Sequence record: OQ383623.1
Strand: one strand, 5' to 3'
DNA length: 64,000 nt
Part shown: one piece after another, positions 4,132 to 50,430 of the stretch
Layout: each line of letters begins with the position of its first letter
How positions within the stretch are numbered: position 1 is the first letter of the stretch
The notes under the pieces: generated by a model
The model's database searches: none
The model's input: the letters and a program-made list of their open reading frames with translations, nothing else
What the model was told of the DNA's origin: nothing
Translations under genes and position numbers: made by a program

Positions 4132-4207
4132 TGGCGACTCTGGCAGGATTTGAACCTGCGACATATGGATTAACAGTCCACCGTTCTACCAGCTGAACTA
4201 CAGAGTC
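4132..4207 (-). tRNA. trnN: tRNA-Asn(GTT)
   Basis: 76-nt cloverleaf GACTCTG...CAGAGTC-G-CCA, anticodon loop CTGTTAA, T loop TTCAAAT. Confidence 0.95.
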
Positions 4208-5707: not shown

Positions 5708-5783
5708 TGGCGGGGGCACGAGGTTTCGAACCTCGAACCTTCGGTTTTGGAGACCGGTGCGCTACCAATTGCGCCATACCCCC
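5708..5783 (-). tRNA. trnW: tRNA-Trp(CCA)
   Basis: 76-nt cloverleaf GGGGGTA...TGCCCCC-G-CCA, anticodon loop CTCCAAA. Confidence 0.95.
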
Positions 5784-45119: not shown

Positions 45120-45659
45120 ATGAGTTTATTTGGAAAGACCGCAAAAGAGCTGGTTTACGATCTCATCGTGTCTCAGAATCCTGGCCTGACTGGTAAGGGC
45201 GTGACCATCGATAAATTGTCGTTCGGTAACCCGGCACACATCACCGTAGCCGATCCTGACCCAGAGCAATACACCAGACTGAACACCACTCTTGATGTCT
45301 CTGGTATTATTGAGAAAGGTACGTTCGGTAAGATGGGGCTTACTTATCGTCGGTTGGATGTTGGTCATCTCTTTGAGAACGTCGTGTTGTCTGTAGATGG
45401 TAGTGGCGCATCCACTGCTGCTGATCTCGTCCCGTTACTGCAGGCTAAGTATAACTGGATGATTGACGCATCGGAGATCTATGCAAACGAGTCAATGACA
45501 TCTTCCACGAAACACAATTTGCGTTTCAATGGCAAGTCTTTGGCTTGGACTGGCACGGTTGAAGTTTATCTAACCGAAGTTCCAAGTGATGGCGTCGATA
45601 TCAGTAAACTGATCACTGTTACTGAGCTGAATGGCTTGGTTTATGAAGTCTCGATATGA
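45120..45659 (+). CDS. Virion structural protein
   Basis: 179 aa with the YRRLDV...F and SLAWTG pattern typical of phiKZ-like tail-associated repeat domains. Confidence 0.6.
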   Translation: MSLFGKTAKELVYDLIVSQNPGLTGKGVTIDKLSFGNPAHITVADPDPEQYTRLNTTLDVSGIIEKGTFGKMGLTYRRLDVGHLFENVVLSVDGSGASTAADLVPLLQAKYNWMIDASEIYANESMTSSTKHNLRFNGKSLAWTGTVEVYLTEVPSDGVDISKLITVTELNGLVYEVSI

Positions 45660-45671
45660 CGCAGGCGTAAC

Positions 45672-45728
45672 AAAAAAAAAATAAGTATTACGAGTACCCC
45701 GACGGGGTACTCGTTTGCTTTATTTTTT
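45672..45728. terminator. Bidirectional terminator
   Basis: ACGAGTACCCC/GGGGTACTCGT 11-bp stem with A- and T-runs. Confidence 0.85.
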
Positions 45729-46164
45729 AGCGTTCAATAATCACTTTTACGATATCTTCTACCGGAGGGTAATACCACAGAACCACGCTGTTTCGTCCCA
45801 AGTCTTTTGGAAACGTTTGACAGTACGCAATGTCGGTGCCGAAGCGCTCAGAGAGCTTTAAAACGTTCTCTGGGAATTGACAGCCACCTCGCCAATCATG
45901 CGTATAGAGTACCTGCTGTAGTAACTTCACATTAGCATCGAAGAAGTACAGATTTTCCACTGGCGCAATATGTGGTACCGGAATTGGCGTGTCTGTAAGT
46001 ACGAACTCCAAACCACCACATTGTTCTGAACGCTCCGCTAGGAGTTTCAGATGCCATGGCATTAGACCGTGGTCTTCCCAGACGATATTGTTGACCAGTA
46101 AACGATCAACGTATTCATCGTAATCAACCGTGAACAGTTTCTTCGCCATCGGTAAACGCCTCAT
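45727..46164 (-). CDS. Hypothetical protein (alternative start 46149)
   Basis: ORF overlapping the end of the MazG-like gene. Confidence 0.6.
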   Translation of the reverse strand: MRRLPMAKKLFTVDYDEYVDRLLVNNIVWEDHGLMPWHLKLLAERSEQCGGLEFVLTDTPIPVPHIAPVENLYFFDANVKLLQQVLYTHDWRGGCQFPENVLKLSERFGTDIAYCQTFPKDLGRNSVVLWYYPPVEDIVKVIIER

Positions 46165-47065
46165 CTTTTACAGTAAGGGAACCGTTTACTTCGATTTCAG
46201 CAGCGGTCATGTCTGCTTCTTTAACGAAGATACCGTCCGCGTTCAGGAAACCCTTACGGTCTTTGATTTCGTCCCACGCCAGAGAGAAGCACTGTTCCAG
46301 AGTCATATCGTACGCATTAGCCAGCGCATTGGCGTATTCGACCATCTGTGCGAAGTGACATTCGATCATTACCGCGTCGCTGTTCTCGAAGTGTTTATAT
46401 TCGAGTTGCTTAGCTGAGTCGATGCCGGCTTGATCCCAGATGTAATCAACAGCTGCTGTGAGATGGAAACGCATTTTGTGGAACAGGTAATGACTGTTCC
46501 CGGCATGTGGGTTCTTTGAACGCGCTTCGTTGACATATGTGCCGATATCGGTCGAGTCAAACTTAATGAGTTCCATCAAGTTAACCAGCACGACCAGAGC
46601 ATCACCGATGCCGTCCATGATGTAACGGCGTTTGTTTTTACTGATACCGGTTGCCGCTTCACCGTCTTCTTCGTAGAGTTTGGTGGCTTGGCTATACCAG
46701 ACGCCGTTATCCAGAATACCACGCGCTTTAGACCAACCCATAACGTTAGTAATACATTGTGGGATGGTGTACAAAGGTACGTAACGCGGACGATCAACCG
46801 TACCACGATACTCGACACCTTCCAACGTCCACGGCATTTCGAAATCATTTATTTCCAAACTCTGGTCGCCTGTGAATACTTTACCTTCGACGTAAGTGTG
46901 ACCGGTTTCACTGTTCACGCACAGGGTGTACAGTTTCTCAAAGGACCACGGTTCAACAAATTGACGTTGGCAAAATCCAGCCAGAAGCTCATTAATCTGT
47001 GCCAGGTACTGGTTAGGTTCAACAATTACGTTGTACGGAATCTGGATAATGAAACGGTCGCCCAT
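46124..47065 (-). CDS. MazG-like nucleotide pyrophosphohydrolase with extra N-terminal domain
   Basis: KLYEEDGE, DGIGDALVVL and AWDEIKDRKG motifs. Confidence 0.8.
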   Translation of the reverse strand: MGDRFIIQIPYNVIVEPNQYLAQINELLAGFCQRQFVEPWSFEKLYTLCVNSETGHTYVEGKVFTGDQSLEINDFEMPWTLEGVEYRGTVDRPRYVPLYTIPQCITNVMGWSKARGILDNGVWYSQATKLYEEDGEAATGISKNKRRYIMDGIGDALVVLVNLMELIKFDSTDIGTYVNEARSKNPHAGNSHYLFHKMRFHLTAAVDYIWDQAGIDSAKQLEYKHFENSDAVMIECHFAQMVEYANALANAYDMTLEQCFSLAWDEIKDRKGFLNADGIFVKEADMTAAEIEVNGSLTVKDEAFTDGEETVHG

Positions 47066-47081
47066 TTTGATAGCTCCTTAA

Positions 47082-47121
47082 ACAAAAAAAATAACTAGGG
47101 TGTCCATATGGACACCCTAAT
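47082..47121 (-). terminator. Intrinsic terminator overlapped by a promoter
   Basis: TAGGGTGTCC-ATAT-GGACACCCTA followed by a T-run. Confidence 0.75.
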
Positions 47122-47132
47122 ACGTATTTTAA
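47105..47132 (-). promoter_or_regulatory. TAC-N15-TATG promoter for the MazG-like gene
   Basis: AAAATAC-GTATTAGGGTGTCCA-TATG. Confidence 0.5.
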
Positions 47133-47317
47133 ATCTTGCACGCACCACCGGTGCAGTTGTCGTCGTCTTTCGACGGGTCAACGCCACCTTCCACACCTGC
47201 GTCAGGGTCAAGTCCAGGGATAACCATCTCGTCATCCGGAGACATGTTTACATCCACACCTAACCCATCACGATGCACGAACGTTGTGGTTTGTCCACGA
47301 CCGAGTGTTCCAGTCAT
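47129..47317 (-). CDS. 62-aa acidic peptide resembling the NrdA C-terminal redox tail
   Basis: GAGG SD; ends DDNCTGGACKI-stop (E. coli NrdA ends DDGCESGACKI). Confidence 0.7.
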   Translation of the reverse strand: MTGTLGRGQTTTFVHRDGLGVDVNMSPDDEMVIPGLDPDAGVEGGVDPSKDDDNCTGGACKI

Positions 47318-47329
47318 ACTTTCCTCTAC

Positions 47330-47809
47330 TTAATTAATCAGGTGTATCACAACGTCTGGCGTTACTACGTCGACCAGACTGCGATAGATTTTATCGTAAC
47401 TGAACTTGTTGAAGAAGAAACCCGCTTCGTCGATAATAACCAAGCCGAATTTCTCGTAGCCGGATATGCCAGCACCAGTCGCACGTTTCCAACCCTCAGG
47501 CAAGTAGTTACAGTGCACGGTCAGCCATCCAATCCCGGCAGCCTTTTCATGGAACTTCTCCACCACTTCGCTCCGTAACGCTTCGTTATGAACCAGATAC
47601 AGAACGCTGCCGTGGAACTTTGCTGACATATCAACAGCGTGTGTTGTAACGCCTTTCTGACGACCAGCGCCATAGCGGATAGTGCGGAACTCGCTCAGTG
47701 CAATATGCGGTAAAAAGCCACAGCTACGGGCTTCATCGGAGTCCAGCTCGATAAGACCTTTGGACAGTTCTTTTACTACGGCACGATAATCGATCCGAGT
47801 TATAGACAT
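47330..47809 (-). CDS. Small degenerate P-loop NTPase-like protein
   Basis: AGRQKGVTT (Walker-A-like) and LVIIDEA (Walker B). Confidence 0.55.
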   Translation of the reverse strand: MSITRIDYRAVVKELSKGLIELDSDEARSCGFLPHIALSEFRTIRYGAGRQKGVTTHAVDMSAKFHGSVLYLVHNEALRSEVVEKFHEKAAGIGWLTVHCNYLPEGWKRATGAGISGYEKFGLVIIDEAGFFFNKFSYDKIYRSLVDVVTPDVVIHLIN

Positions 47810-47820
47810 CTGTTTTCACC

Positions 47821-48588
47821 TTATTTGTAATTAACCATATACGGCGAGCCCTGCTTAGTAAAGCCAACCGTCATCTTGCTCGCCTCTTCTTTTACCCATG
47901 CGGGTAATTCTTCACGGAATGCCGGGTTCAGGAACCAAATCTGCTCATAGCGCCCGTCAATCTTTTCAACAACACGTTCCCAACCTTCGACGTACGTCAA
48001 CGAGAACCATTTAAAACGCGCATGGCGTGCCCAGTAGTGGTATTCGATGGTTCGACCGACGTGAGTCAAGACATCAATCAGAACTTGGTAGAAGCTCGGC
48101 TTTCCGATGACATGGGTATACTCGAAGATAACAGACTCTTCGCCAGGGACGAAGTTATCTTCAAAATTCTTCTCCCCTGTTAAAGGTACCATTATCGTGT
48201 CGTTGTTGATACACAGCAACCAGTGCTTATTCGAAAATATCGGCGTGTCGCCTGAGAAACGAGCCCAGCGATAATTTTCAATCGCGACGCCAATCTGTGG
48301 CCGTAGTGTATCGACCACCTTCGCTATCGCTGCAGGGTCTATCGGCTCATAAACCAGACAAATCGCTTGCGCTTGCTCTCTTTCCTGCTCAGGCTCCGCA
48401 GGTCGTGGTCGCCGCCCCAGCATCAAAATCCCACTAAGATTAGTTTCCCCAATCTCAATGATTTCTATTTCGCTAGTAGGAAGCTGCCGTTTAGCGTCCT
48501 CCATATCGACGGCTCCTAATAACCCGTATTCGTAGTCGTCGAATTCCACCGTGTAAAATTCATCGGAGAACGCAAAGAGTTTCATCAT
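47821..48588 (-). CDS. Hypothetical protein
   Basis: 255-aa ORF. Confidence 0.7.
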   Translation of the reverse strand: MMKLFAFSDEFYTVEFDDYEYGLLGAVDMEDAKRQLPTSEIEIIEIGETNLSGILMLGRRPRPAEPEQEREQAQAICLVYEPIDPAAIAKVVDTLRPQIGVAIENYRWARFSGDTPIFSNKHWLLCINNDTIMVPLTGEKNFEDNFVPGEESVIFEYTHVIGKPSFYQVLIDVLTHVGRTIEYHYWARHARFKWFSLTYVEGWERVVEKIDGRYEQIWFLNPAFREELPAWVKEEASKMTVGFTKQGSPYMVNYK

Positions 48589-48589
48589 C

Positions 48590-48853
48590 TTATTTCTCCA
48601 TTGTTTTAAAGAGAACGTCTACGCTGTTACGGAGCATATTCAGTTCTTCTTCTTTCTTACGCAGCAGCATTTCAGGAGCGTTCTTTGCAAACTCTTTCAA
48701 TGCCATTTGGACGACATGCGAATCGGTTTCGTCTGGGAATAGGGCCTTTAATGCAACCCATTCTTCCGCCGTGAAAACGTCGCCTTTGCGAACATTACGC
48801 TGTTGTGGTAGTCGAATTGTTTTAGTGAGTCGGTCAGTCATAGCTCCACCCAA
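48590..48853 (-). CDS. Small hypothetical protein
   Basis: 87 aa, overlapping neighbouring genes. Confidence 0.55.
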   Translation of the reverse strand: MGGAMTDRLTKTIRLPQQRNVRKGDVFTAEEWVALKALFPDETDSHVVQMALKEFAKNAPEMLLRKKEEELNMLRNSVDVLFKTMEK

Positions 48854-49374
48854 ATCAGTTTAAAGGTATTACCTTCTAAGCCAGTCGGATGGATAATCAT
48901 CGCTTCGGTATAGATAGGCTCTTCTTCTGCAATACGGTGCTCAGCTGCTAAGCCTGAAAGGTGCATGTAGAGGTCTTCATCCATGTCCCCGTTAAAAGAC
49001 GAGGTCAGGATAAAGGGTGTGGACTCAGCGATTTGCAAAAGTGTTTCTTTGCTAATCTGCATTTCCATTGTCCGACGCCGTTCCATCCAACTGCCTTGTT
49101 CGTGGATATACGGGTCGGTATTAATGCGAACGACAGGTTCCGTAGACATACCCAGACCACGCGACATCATCTGGATAGCCAGAAGTGTCCACCATTCTTG
49201 TTCAGCTATAGGGAAACCGATAGCTTTCATCGTACCGTCTGGTTGTGGAACGTGCAATTGTCCACGATGTTCGTCTGGAAACTCGATGATCTTCTGTCCG
49301 TTGATAGGAATGAACGGTGGTTCGTCCGTGGCAACCACCGCTTTAGGCTTGAAGGGAACGACGTTGTCAGCCAT
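48838..49374 (-). CDS. Hypothetical protein
   Basis: 178 aa with AGGAG SD. Confidence 0.7.
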   Translation of the reverse strand: MADNVVPFKPKAVVATDEPPFIPINGQKIIEFPDEHRGQLHVPQPDGTMKAIGFPIAEQEWWTLLAIQMMSRGLGMSTEPVVRINTDPYIHEQGSWMERRRTMEMQISKETLLQIAESTPFILTSSFNGDMDEDLYMHLSGLAAEHRIAEEEPIYTEAMIIHPTGLEGNTFKLIWVEL

Positions 49375-49386
49375 AAACGCTCCTAA

Positions 49387-50430
49387 TTAGATAGCGACAG
49401 GTGCTTTAATTGGGTCGTGTGATACGTAATCCTGGATCTCAAAATCATCGAACTTATAATCGAAGATAGATTCCGGTTTACGTTTGATGACCAGTTTCGG
49501 CAAAGGTAAAGGTTCGCGCGTCAGCTGCAGCTTGGCCTGCTCCAGATGGTTGGAGTACAGATGCACGTCACCGCCGCTCCAAACGAAATCGCCTGGCACC
49601 ATGTTAACTTGCTGAGCTACCATGTGTACGAGTAATGCGTAAGACGCGATGTTGAACGGTACGCCGAGGAAAAAATCACACGATCTTTGATAAAGCTGGC
49701 ATGACAACGCGCGAGCAGGTATCTGGTGAGCCGTTAGCCACGCGTGTCTTTCCGCATCGGTTGCATTATTGCCAATAACAACATCGCGAAGATAAACGTC
49801 AGATAAAACGCGATGGTCATATCGTAATATACTCTGACGTTCTTCCAGAGACAGTTCATGAGTGTAGAACTGGAAGAAGGAGTGACACGGCGCTAAAGCC
49901 ATTTGGTCTAGCTCGCCCACATTCCAGGCGCTGACAATGATACGGCGATTATCTGGATCGTTACGCAACTGGTTTATTACAGTGGAGATTTGATCGTGGC
50001 TGTATTCCAAAAACGCTCCACGGGTTACCTGACCGTCGGTTAAAGTTCCAACTTCCTTATAGCCTTTGGCTTTCAGCAGCCCGATACGTTTAGGGTCATC
50101 AGCTACCCGCACGATTGTTTTCCACGCCCGCCATTGCTTACCGTATACCGGCCCGAGGTCGCCATTAGCGTCGGCCCATTCATCCCAAATTGTTACCCCG
50201 TTATCGTTCAGGTATTTGATGTTGGTATCGCCGCTAAGGAACCACAGAAGCTCGTGAATGATGGAGCGGAGGTGACATTTCTTAGTAGTAACTAATGGGA
50301 AGCCTTCTTGCAGGTTAAAGCGCATCTGGCGACCAAAGACAGAAAGTGTCCCTGTCCCAGTACGATCGCCTTTAACATGACCCTCGTCCAGAATATTCTG
50401 CATCATTTCAAGATACTGCTTCACAATCAT
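49387..50430 (-). CDS. thyA: Thymidylate synthase
   Basis: [24 protein letters not shown] (catalytic Cys), [22 protein letters not shown]; start ATG 50430 after GGAG. Confidence 0.97.

What the first reader, a model, noticed from the sequence alone, without database searches (positions are those of the whole stretch)
47129..47317. Free-standing mimic of the ribonucleotide reductase (NrdA) C-terminal redox tail
Seen: a 62-aa acidic, probably disordered peptide with its own GAGG SD, ending DDNCTGGACKI-stop, with an upstream TTTFVHRDG. Established: E. coli NrdA ends ...KTLYYQNTRDG...DDGCESGACKI. Its Cys754/Cys759 pair shuttles electrons from thioredoxin/glutaredoxin to the active site, and in yeast RNR the tail can act on a neighbouring subunit. 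8 of the last 11 residues are identical and terminal. No nrdA body is adjacent, and the gene lies in the thyA/MazG nucleotide region. Inference: a trans-acting peptide that speeds re-reduction of host RNR to raise dNTP supply, or a decoy that captures Trx/Grx. I am not aware of this being described.
Basis: partly seen in the sequence, partly recalled or inferred. Interest (0 to 1): 0.78.

Follow-up and report, generated by a model that had tools for sequence, protein, structure and literature searches.

The report
Free-standing ribonucleotide reductase redox tail
A 62-residue jumbo-phage protein ends in the two-cysteine tail normally found on the bacterial enzyme that makes DNA building blocks. 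It belongs to a large unnamed family of such detached tails in phages and bacteria, and probably passes electrons to that enzyme from outside.

Summary
The window is the last 64 kb of a SPN3US-like Salmonella jumbo phage. ORF 47129..47317(-) is gp234 in SPN3US. It is a 62-aa acidic protein whose last 15 residues match the C-terminus of E. coli NrdA at 10 of 15 positions, end to end.

A profile of 21 phage homologues, searched against the whole PDB, hits only class Ia NrdA C-termini. Both cysteines and four more of the last eight residues are invariant, while synonymous sites are saturated (pN/pS 0.16). It is therefore a translated, selected gene and not nrdA debris.

1. The phage genome has no class I or III RNR by search and none annotated.
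2. The peptide belongs to a wide unannotated family: 77 clusters at 50% identity, found in many phages and in bacteria such as Neisseria.
3. The module also occurs fused to a 5'-deoxyribonucleotidase, a MazG-like enzyme and a phrog_10453 protein. In one metagenomic phage lineage the fused module lies directly upstream of an NrdA that lacks exactly this tail; 0 of 160 other NrdAs examined lack it.

Best reading: a trans-acting RNR redox tail that works on host NrdAB. Whether it activates or blocks the enzyme is not shown. No prior description was found.

The parts
47129..47317 (-). CDS of the 62-aa acidic peptide (stop codon included); SPN3US gp234 homologue
   Evidence: PHROGs 38753, 14561 and 24014, all of unknown function. 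pI 4.05, 12 D/E, 11 G.
47129..47176 (-). Last 15 codons plus stop: the NrdA-like redox tail with Cys55 and Cys60
   Evidence: BLASTP 10/15 to E. coli NrdA residues 747-761. tblastn hit 47176..47132. The PDB profile search hit only NrdA C-termini. pS 0.69 against pN 0.11 over the last 8 codons in 14 phages.
47132..47221 (-). Conserved C-terminal 30-residue module (residues 33-62)
   Evidence: Alignment A1 of 21 sequences: G35, G45, V46, D47, C55, G58, A59, C60 and K61 invariant; L36, D37, D52 and I62 at 90% or more.
47222..47317 (-). Variable N-terminal part (residues 1-32), not conserved in length or sequence among relatives
   Evidence: homologues range from 26 to 97 aa.
47322..47327 (-). Shine-Dalgarno-like AGAGGA, 5 nt before the ATG
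   Evidence: GAGG/AAGG-type sites sit at the same place in most of the 12 relatives inspected; they are weaker in two or three (AGAGA-type).
47084..47121 (-). Intrinsic-terminator-like hairpin (12-bp stem, 4-nt loop) followed by a T run, 8 nt after the stop codon
   Evidence: RNA fold -20.6 kcal/mol, z -6.9. A hairpin plus T run is found at the same place in 9-10 of 12 relatives.
47330..47809 (-). Context: upstream 159-aa gene (phrog_2586), syntenic in all SPN3US-like relatives; a single RecA-like P-loop domain
   Evidence: AF2 model pLDDT 70.7. Weak Foldseek matches to helicase domain 1, TM 0.45-0.5.
47821..48588 (-). Context: 255-aa gene (phrog_10453). Its homologue is fused to the tail module in one 237-kb viral contig (L192).
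46124..47065 (-). Context: MazG-like nucleotide pyrophosphohydrolase, the next gene downstream
   Evidence: phrog_7855 E 3e-144; Pfam MazG weak. A MazG-like protein fused to the module exists elsewhere (P0182).
49387..50424 (-). Context: thymidylate synthase, at the head of the gene row

Best explanation
The ORF encodes a small, probably unstructured, acidic protein whose working part is its C-terminus. That end is a detached copy of the two-cysteine tail of the class Ia ribonucleotide reductase large subunit (NrdA).

In NrdA this tail swings into the active site after each turnover and reduces the active-site disulfide. It is then itself re-reduced by thioredoxin or glutaredoxin. This is established biochemistry, summarised in PMC11903788 and PMC4078304.

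Proposed mechanism here:
1. The peptide is made during infection from the thyA-to-peptide gene row.
2. It is kept reduced by the host's glutaredoxin 1 or thioredoxin 1.
3. It enters the active site of the host's NrdA and delivers electrons in trans.
4. This adds a diffusible shuttle to the tethered one, sustaining dNDP output for a 243-kb phage that has no RNR of its own.

Shown: the tail identity, its invariance under purifying selection, the lack of a phage RNR, the nucleotide-metabolism context, the existence of the wider family, and one natural case where NrdA has lost the tail and the neighbouring protein carries it.

Inferred: expression, reduction by host redoxins, entry into host NrdA, and the direction of the effect (activation).
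For: (1) Tail likeness. 10/15 identities to E. coli NrdA, C-terminus to C-terminus. All 14 PDB hits of the family profile are class Ia NrdA C-termini, with E 0.019 for E. coli. These include the 25-residue NrdA tail peptide of entry 1QFN and N. gonorrhoeae NrdA 7MDI (identity confirmed in PMC11226230).

(2) Selection. In 21 phage homologues both Cys and G58, A59, K61 are invariant. Over the last 8 codons pS is 0.69 and pN 0.11.

(3) No class I or III RNR in the phage by tblastn, and none among 261 annotated features. Host-type NrdA tails are near-invariant in 80 Enterobacterales species.

(4) Context. The thyA ... peptide - mazG synteny holds across five phage genera. 22 of 51 viral module loci have ThyA, MazG, dCMP deaminase or dCTP deaminase neighbours; many of these loci are close relatives.

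(5) Fusions of the module to a 5'-deoxyribonucleotidase and to a MazG-like enzyme.

(6) The split case. In L123-L125, from three samples, the order is DHFR / nucleotidase-module / nrdA / nrdB. That NrdA is 70% identical to E. coli NrdA but stops at the position of E. coli residue 740 of 761. It has no Cys in its last 40 residues and no hidden tail in the spacer. By contrast 80 of 80 viral relatives and 80 of 80 enterobacterial NrdAs keep a two-Cys tail.

(7) Expression signals: SD and a conserved terminator.
Against: - The host NrdA has its own tethered tail, so the benefit of a free one is not obvious.
- No expression or interaction data could be reached; the SPN3US infection proteomics paper is not held.
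- Bacterial homologues are not next to nrd genes. They sit between iscS and iscU in N. meningitidis, after an Nramp gene, after LysR genes, or alone.
- No NrdA or NrdB lies in the held flanks of 51 viral module loci.
- The split case is a single lineage.
- The family's second conserved stretch (G45-V46-D47 and upstream) has no counterpart in NrdA and is unexplained.
- The tail competes with nucleotides for the active-site pocket (PMC11903788), so a free tail could also inhibit.
Confidence: 0.55

Rival explanations
1. Blocker or decoy. The free tail occupies the NrdA active-site channel, or soaks up reduced glutaredoxin/thioredoxin. It would then lower or re-tune host RNR activity or the host thiol redox state, in the manner of the small disordered RNR inhibitors of yeast.
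For: The tail and nucleotides compete for the same pocket (PMC11903788). The closest known small-protein regulators of RNR are inhibitors acting on tail function; see the title of the Sml1 paper listed in PMC4078304. The bacterial homologues sit in stress-linked settings: the isc operon, next to Nramp, next to LysR.
Against: The phage has no RNR of its own and a 243-kb genome to copy, so shutting down host RNR would starve it. The tail-less NrdA with a module next door argues that free modules are productive partners.
Confidence: 0.15
2. Docking tag or adaptor. The invariant tail serves mainly to bind NrdA or a redoxin. The variable N-terminal part, or a fused enzyme, is thereby brought next to RNR, forming a dNTP-synthesis complex.
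For: The C-terminus is invariant and the N-terminus highly variable. There are natural fusions to a 5'-deoxyribonucleotidase, a MazG-like enzyme and the phrog_10453 protein, whose homologue is encoded two genes upstream in the window. Several N-terminally unrelated small proteins share only the tail.
Against: Many members are only 26-45 aa, leaving little besides the acidic stretch and the tail to bind a second partner. Strict conservation of both cysteines points to redox chemistry rather than binding alone. This reading does not exclude the shuttle reading.
Confidence: 0.15
3. A thiol or metal-handling small protein unrelated to RNR, for example an Fe-S assembly or metal-stress accessory. 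Its C-terminus would resemble the NrdA tail only because both are substrates of the same redoxins, or by convergence.
For: In N. meningitidis the gene lies between iscS and iscU. In another bacterium it follows an Nramp transporter gene. The protein is very acidic.
Against: Bacterial contexts are inconsistent. Phage contexts are consistently nucleotide metabolism. The fusions and the tail-less NrdA neighbour tie the module to dNTP synthesis. Up to 12 of 16 terminal residues are identical between the Neisseria peptide and E. coli NrdA.
Confidence: 0.1
4. A non-functional leftover of a deleted nrdA, or a spurious ORF.
For: It is short, has no domain hit, and is annotated only as hypothetical.
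Against: Synonymous sites are saturated while tail residues are invariant. It has its own SD and terminator, conserved in relatives. There is no NrdA similarity upstream of the tail. Homologues with their own start codons occur in bacteria and unrelated phages.
Confidence: 0.02

Closest known systems
C-terminal redox tail of class Ia RNR alpha subunit (E. coli NrdA Cys754/Cys759)
   Same: An acidic run, then two cysteines four residues apart, then K-I at the very C-terminus. 10/15 identity for the window peptide and 12/16 for the Neisseria homologue. Many phage NrdAs end with exactly the tail variant seen in free modules.
   Different: Here the tail is a separate gene product of 62 aa with no catalytic body. 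It also has an extra conserved stretch (G45-V46-D47 and upstream) that NrdA lacks.
Small disordered RNR regulators of eukaryotes (Sml1 and relatives)
   Same: Small, presumably unstructured proteins that act on the large subunit through the step served by its C-terminal tail. Basis: the paper title cited in PMC4078304, with details from my own knowledge.
   Different: No sequence likeness. Those proteins inhibit and carry no copy of the tail. They are eukaryotic.
Dedicated RNR electron donors and helpers (thioredoxin, glutaredoxin, NrdH, phage T4-type redoxins; NrdI, YfaE)
   Same: Small accessory proteins, often encoded with nrd genes or by phages, that serve the redox cycle of RNR (review PMC4009431).
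   Different: Those are folded thioredoxin-fold, flavodoxin or ferredoxin proteins. This one has no such fold or CxxC motif, and it copies the acceptor end of the relay rather than the donor.
Cysteine-rich C-terminal domains of class II RNRs
   Same: C-terminal cysteine-bearing elements that mediate turnover with thioredoxin (PMC5704485; PMC9669993).
   Different: They are part of the RNR polypeptide and form zinc-finger folds. They are not free-standing.

Membership tests
Class Ia RNR large subunit (NrdA) | Catalytic alpha/beta barrel body (Pfam Ribonuc_red_lgN / lgC) with the active-site cysteines | tested here: not met
   62 aa; no Pfam or NCBIfam hit. The BLASTP likeness is limited to the last 15 residues. 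No NrdA body anywhere in the phage genome.
Class Ia RNR large subunit (NrdA) | Flexible acidic C-terminal tail with a cysteine pair ending the chain | tested here: met
Free-standing NrdA-tail module family (PHROGs 38753 / 14561 / 24014; no name) | Small acidic protein, or the C-terminal end of a fusion, whose last eight residues have Cys at positions 1 and 6, G-A at 4-5, K at 7 and I or L at 8, directly before the stop | tested here: met
   There are 77 representative clusters with E<=1e-3; for nearly all of them the match ends at the C-terminus of a 38-120 aa protein.
Free-standing NrdA-tail module family | Works with class Ia RNR (functional definition) | not testable with these tools
   Indirect only: the tail-less NrdA next to a module, fusions and context.
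Thioredoxin-fold redoxins (Trx, Grx, NrdH) | Thioredoxin fold with a CxxC active site | tested here: not met
   No family hit. The cysteines are four residues apart at the extreme C-terminus. The composition suggests disorder. A structure prediction of the peptide could not be run.
RiPP precursor peptide | Adjacent maturase (radical SAM, cyclase, protease/transporter) conserved with the peptide | tested here: not met
   No such neighbour in the window or in more than 20 phage and bacterial contexts.
Decaying nrdA pseudogene fragment | Neutral evolution and remnants of the nrdA body upstream | tested here: not met
   pN/pS 0.16 with saturated synonymous sites. No upstream NrdA similarity.
Sml1-type disordered RNR inhibitors | Binds the large subunit and blocks tail-mediated regeneration | not testable with these tools
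   No sequence relative was returned by any search. This is a functional analogy only.
Acidic Fe-S assembly accessory proteins (IscX / CyaY-like) | Conserved placement in isc operons and a family signature | tested here: inconclusive
   isc placement occurs only in the N. meningitidis group. Other bacteria place the gene elsewhere. No family hit.

The most novel reading that the evidence does not exclude
The RNR redox tail exists in nature as a portable, separately encoded module. Phages that lack RNR use it to plug a diffusible electron shuttle into the host's NrdAB. Some phages have moved the tail off NrdA onto a neighbouring enzyme. Bacteria such as Neisseria keep a spare copy under stress-linked control. 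That would make it a new class of RNR accessory factor and a new kind of phage auxiliary metabolic gene.
Probability: 0.5. Interest if true: 0.85.

Novelty: new variant of a known kind. Interest (0 to 1): 0.8.

Why it matters
Re-reduction of the active site through the C-terminal tail is a required half of the RNR cycle. It has been treated as a built-in property of the large subunit.

A separately encoded tail, conserved across many phages and some bacteria, would mean this half-reaction can be supplied or tuned from outside. That gives a simple handle on how RNR-less jumbo phages secure dNTPs from the host enzyme. It also adds a fourth kind of small RNR helper beside redoxins, NrdI/YfaE and the eukaryotic inhibitors.

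The finding assigns a testable role to three PHROG families and to hundreds of unnamed 40-100-aa proteins. It also shows that very short, domain-less ORFs in phage nucleotide-metabolism clusters can be read by their termini.

Tried and rejected
- Single-sequence phmmer of the peptide against the PDB found nothing; only the family profile reached NrdA.
- Pfam and NCBIfam gave no hit for the phage or bacterial members.
- blastn of the tail-coding DNA against 5,426 E. coli genomes found no match, so there is no recent capture of nrdA DNA.
- tblastn of the peptide against 50,697 phage records found only SPN3US-like, Erwinia and Cronobacter jumbo phages and no nrdA genes.
- The upstream 159-aa neighbour as a possible redox partner: its model is a RecA-like P-loop domain with no redox link.
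- The RiPP-precursor idea: no maturase neighbour anywhere.
- Fe-S accessory idea: supported by one bacterial context only.
- NrdA or NrdB in the held flanks of 51 viral module loci: none.
A degenerate DNA pattern of the eight terminal codons was used instead.
- The SPN3US infection-proteomics paper (PMC6384053) and the Sml1 paper (PMC1892911) are not held. The SPN3US essential-gene paper does not mention gp233 or gp234.
- The literature search for the terminal five letters was swamped by a surname.

Full report
WHAT THE WINDOW IS. Bases 46000-49500 are 100% identical to Salmonella phage MET_P1_082_240 (OQ383623.1, Seoulvirus) and about 96% identical to SPN3US. The window is the last 64 kb of that 243,224-bp record. 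The ORF in question is annotated there as a hypothetical protein and is SPN3US_0234 in SPN3US.

THE OBSERVATION. ORF 47129..47317(-) encodes 62 aa with pI 4.05, 12 Asp/Glu and 11 Gly. It has an AGAGGA 5 nt before the ATG. A 12-bp hairpin plus T run begins 8 nt after the stop, with fold energy -20.6 kcal/mol and z -6.9.

I fetched E. coli K-12 nrdA through an accession shown in papers. Its product ends in a stretch that matches the peptide's last 15 residues at 10 positions, both at the extreme C-terminus, with pairwise E 4e-5.

IS THE LIKENESS SPECIFIC? I aligned 21 homologues from Seoulvirus, Machinavirus, Erskinevirus, Derbicusvirus, Alexandravirus and metagenomes (A1).
- Invariant columns: G35, G45, V46, D47, C55, G58, A59, C60, K61.
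- The last residue is I in 20 sequences and L in 1.
- The residue after the first Cys varies (T, P, E, A). The next is G or S.
- The first 32 residues vary in sequence and in length; total lengths run from 48 to 97 aa.

A profile of A1 searched against all 177,635 distinct PDB sequences returned 14 hits, every one a class Ia NrdA matched at its C-terminus. E. coli scored E 0.019. The hits include the 25-residue NrdA tail peptide of entry 1QFN and N. gonorrhoeae NrdA 7MDI (the identity of 7MDI comes from PMC11226230). From my own knowledge, 1QFN is the mixed-disulfide complex of that free peptide with glutaredoxin 1. If so, a detached tail is a competent redoxin ligand.

SELECTION. Across 14 phage genes the last eight codons have pS 0.69 (saturated) and pN 0.11. 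All non-synonymous change is confined to the two variable positions. The gene is therefore translated and under purifying selection, which excludes a decaying fragment. An SD-like site and the terminator recur in relatives: a hairpin plus T run in 9-10 of 12.

NO PHAGE RNR. The 261 annotated features of the genome include thymidylate synthase, thymidylate kinase, dihydrofolate reductase, MazG and an HD hydrolase. They include no RNR and no thioredoxin or glutaredoxin. Local tblastn with E. coli NrdA, NrdB and YfaE, a phage NrdA/NrdB and a bacterial NrdD/NrdG found nothing except the peptide's own tail. Class II RNR was judged from annotation only. By contrast, phiKZ encodes RNR (PMC12571901). 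NrdA tails of 80 Enterobacterales species are almost identical, so the presumed host target is constant.

CONTEXT. In all SPN3US-like relatives the order is thyA ... a 150-175-aa P-loop gene - peptide - (sometimes one or two genes) - mazG. In Alexandravirus a dCMP deaminase lies nearby. The P-loop neighbour models as a single RecA-like domain and gives no redox clue.

A MUCH WIDER FAMILY. A profile search of the 5.8-billion-protein collection gave 177 hits. An index-free HMM search of 1.84 billion representatives gave 77 clusters with E<=1e-3. Nearly all are 38-120 aa with the match ending at the C-terminus.

Many hits are bacterial: Neisseria species, Pasteurella testudinis and unnamed metagenomic bacteria. 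These have their own start codon and an acidic N-terminal part. They share the G-V-D stretch and the tail with the phage peptides. The N. meningitidis member matches E. coli NrdA at 12 of 16 terminal residues. N. gonorrhoeae NrdA keeps its own tail, so in Neisseria, at genus level, the free peptide appears to be an addition rather than a replacement.

Bacterial contexts differ:
- between iscS and iscU in N. meningitidis;
- directly after an Nramp gene, with nrdG-nrdD 2.4 kb downstream;
- after LysR genes;
- alone.

No Pfam or NCBIfam model covers any member.

OTHER PHAGES. I searched IMG/VR with a degenerate DNA pattern for the eight terminal codons plus stop, taking the G-G variant only. It matched 89 stretches, and the 80 loci returned were examined:
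- 27 are full or split phage NrdA genes that end in exactly this tail.
- 44 are free-standing ORFs of 26-80 aa.
- 7 are longer non-NrdA ORFs.
- 2 are chance matches.

Several free-standing groups have N-terminal parts unrelated to the family above and share only the acidic run and the tail. The tail is therefore the common functional unit. No NrdA or NrdB lies in the held flanks of these 51 loci. However, 22 of them have ThyA, MazG, dCMP deaminase or dCTP deaminase/dUTPase neighbours, although many of the 51 are close relatives of one another. Two further metagenomic phage groups place the peptide next to thyA, tmk or dCTP deaminase genes.

FUSIONS AND THE SPLIT CASE.
- P0164 is a 5'-3' deoxyribonucleotidase (phrog_2643, E 3e-15) ending in the module.
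- P0182 is a MazG-like pyrophosphohydrolase (phrog_671, E 2e-30) ending in the module.
- L192 fuses the module to a phrog_10453 protein, whose homologue is the 255-aa gene at 47821..48588 in the window.

P0164 sits in three contigs from three samples in the order DHFR / P0164 / nrdA / nrdB. That NrdA is 70-71% identical to E. coli NrdA across both exteins. Its alignment stops at E. coli residue 740 of 761. It has no Cys in its last 40 residues, and the 46-nt spacer before nrdB hides no tail in any frame.

Loss of the tail is otherwise not seen. 80 of 80 viral relatives of this NrdA and 80 of 80 enterobacterial NrdAs keep a two-Cys tail. The one tail-less NrdA found has the module encoded immediately upstream. 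This is the strongest evidence that the module does the tail's job in trans.

MECHANISM. Established: after each turnover the active-site disulfide of NrdA is reduced by the tail's cysteine pair, which thioredoxin or glutaredoxin then re-reduces (PMC11903788, PMC4078304).

Inferred for the window: the peptide is reduced by host redoxins, enters host NrdA and reduces the active site, adding a diffusible route in parallel with the tethered tail.

Open points:
- Direction of effect. The tail also competes with nucleotides for the pocket.
- The role of the G45-V46-D47 stretch and of the variable N-terminus, which could dock on NrdA or on a phage partner.
- Why bacteria that keep a tail on NrdA also carry a free copy.

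My estimates: trans-acting shuttle 0.55, blocker or decoy 0.15, docking tag 0.15, unrelated thiol/metal role 0.10, non-functional 0.02.

NOVELTY. Three PHROGs hold the phage members without annotation. Reviews of RNR accessory proteins and of RNR C-termini list no free-standing tail (PMC4009431, PMC9669993). Four literature searches found no description. I rate it a new variant of a known kind: the chemistry is known, but the separate, mobile encoding is not.

LIMITS.
- No expression or interaction data.
- No structure model of the peptide.
- The RNR status of the other module-bearing phages is unchecked.
- The split case is one lineage.
- Bacterial taxonomy is known only for named records.
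- In several SPFM phage records the gene and its 3.5-kb surroundings appear in many pieces: the peptide match is in 2-3 pieces in seven listed records, and up to 40 pieces over 3.5 kb appear in the records with the shattered region. I take these to be assembly errors.

Noticed in passing
window 47330-47809 (-): A 159-aa protein (phrog_2586) with Walker-A-like and Walker-B-like stretches lies always directly upstream of the peptide in SPN3US-like phages. It models as a lone RecA-like P-loop domain with only weak matches to helicase domain 1. Its function is unknown.
   Followed up: partly
window 47821-48588 (-); L192:79-1143: The 255-aa phrog_10453 protein has no known fold or family. In one 237-kb viral contig its homologue is fused in frame to the tail module, and the P-loop gene is absent from the held stretch.
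   Followed up: partly
L101:6082-6210 (N. meningitidis contig AEQJ01000026.1): A 42-aa homologue of the peptide lies between iscS and iscU, flanked by uptake-sequence-like inverted repeats. The called 69-aa ORF overlaps the end of iscS and probably starts at the internal Met.
   Followed up: partly
L123:1944-4970: A metagenomic phage NrdA carries an intein of about 260 aa and lacks the C-terminal cysteine tail. A terminator-like hairpin sits in the 46-nt spacer before nrdB.
   Followed up: yes
L221-L300 (viral NrdA relatives): Most of these marine-type phage NrdAs end in a different tail, with the two cysteines only two residues apart. Whether free-standing modules of that type exist was not examined.
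   Followed up: no
window 4132-4207 and 5708-5783 (-): Two phage tRNA genes, tRNA-Asn(GTT) and tRNA-Trp(CCA).
   Followed up: yes
window 45690-45714: A perfect 11-bp-stem hairpin reads as a terminator on both strands, between the converging genes 45120..45659(+) and 45727..46164(-).
   Followed up: no
OQ383623.1 41789-44024 (outside the window; L004): Two adjacent radical-SAM-domain genes in the same phage genome, far from the peptide gene. They were not examined.
   Followed up: no
L199:458-667: A 70-aa viral protein (phrog_20277) combines a zinc-ribbon-like four-cysteine N-terminal part with the same terminal tail.
   Followed up: partly
phage records LR5359xx (SPFM series): In several of these records the 3.5-kb region around the gene aligns in up to 40 pieces, and the peptide gene in 2-3 pieces. 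This looks like sequencing or assembly error rather than biology.
   Followed up: no
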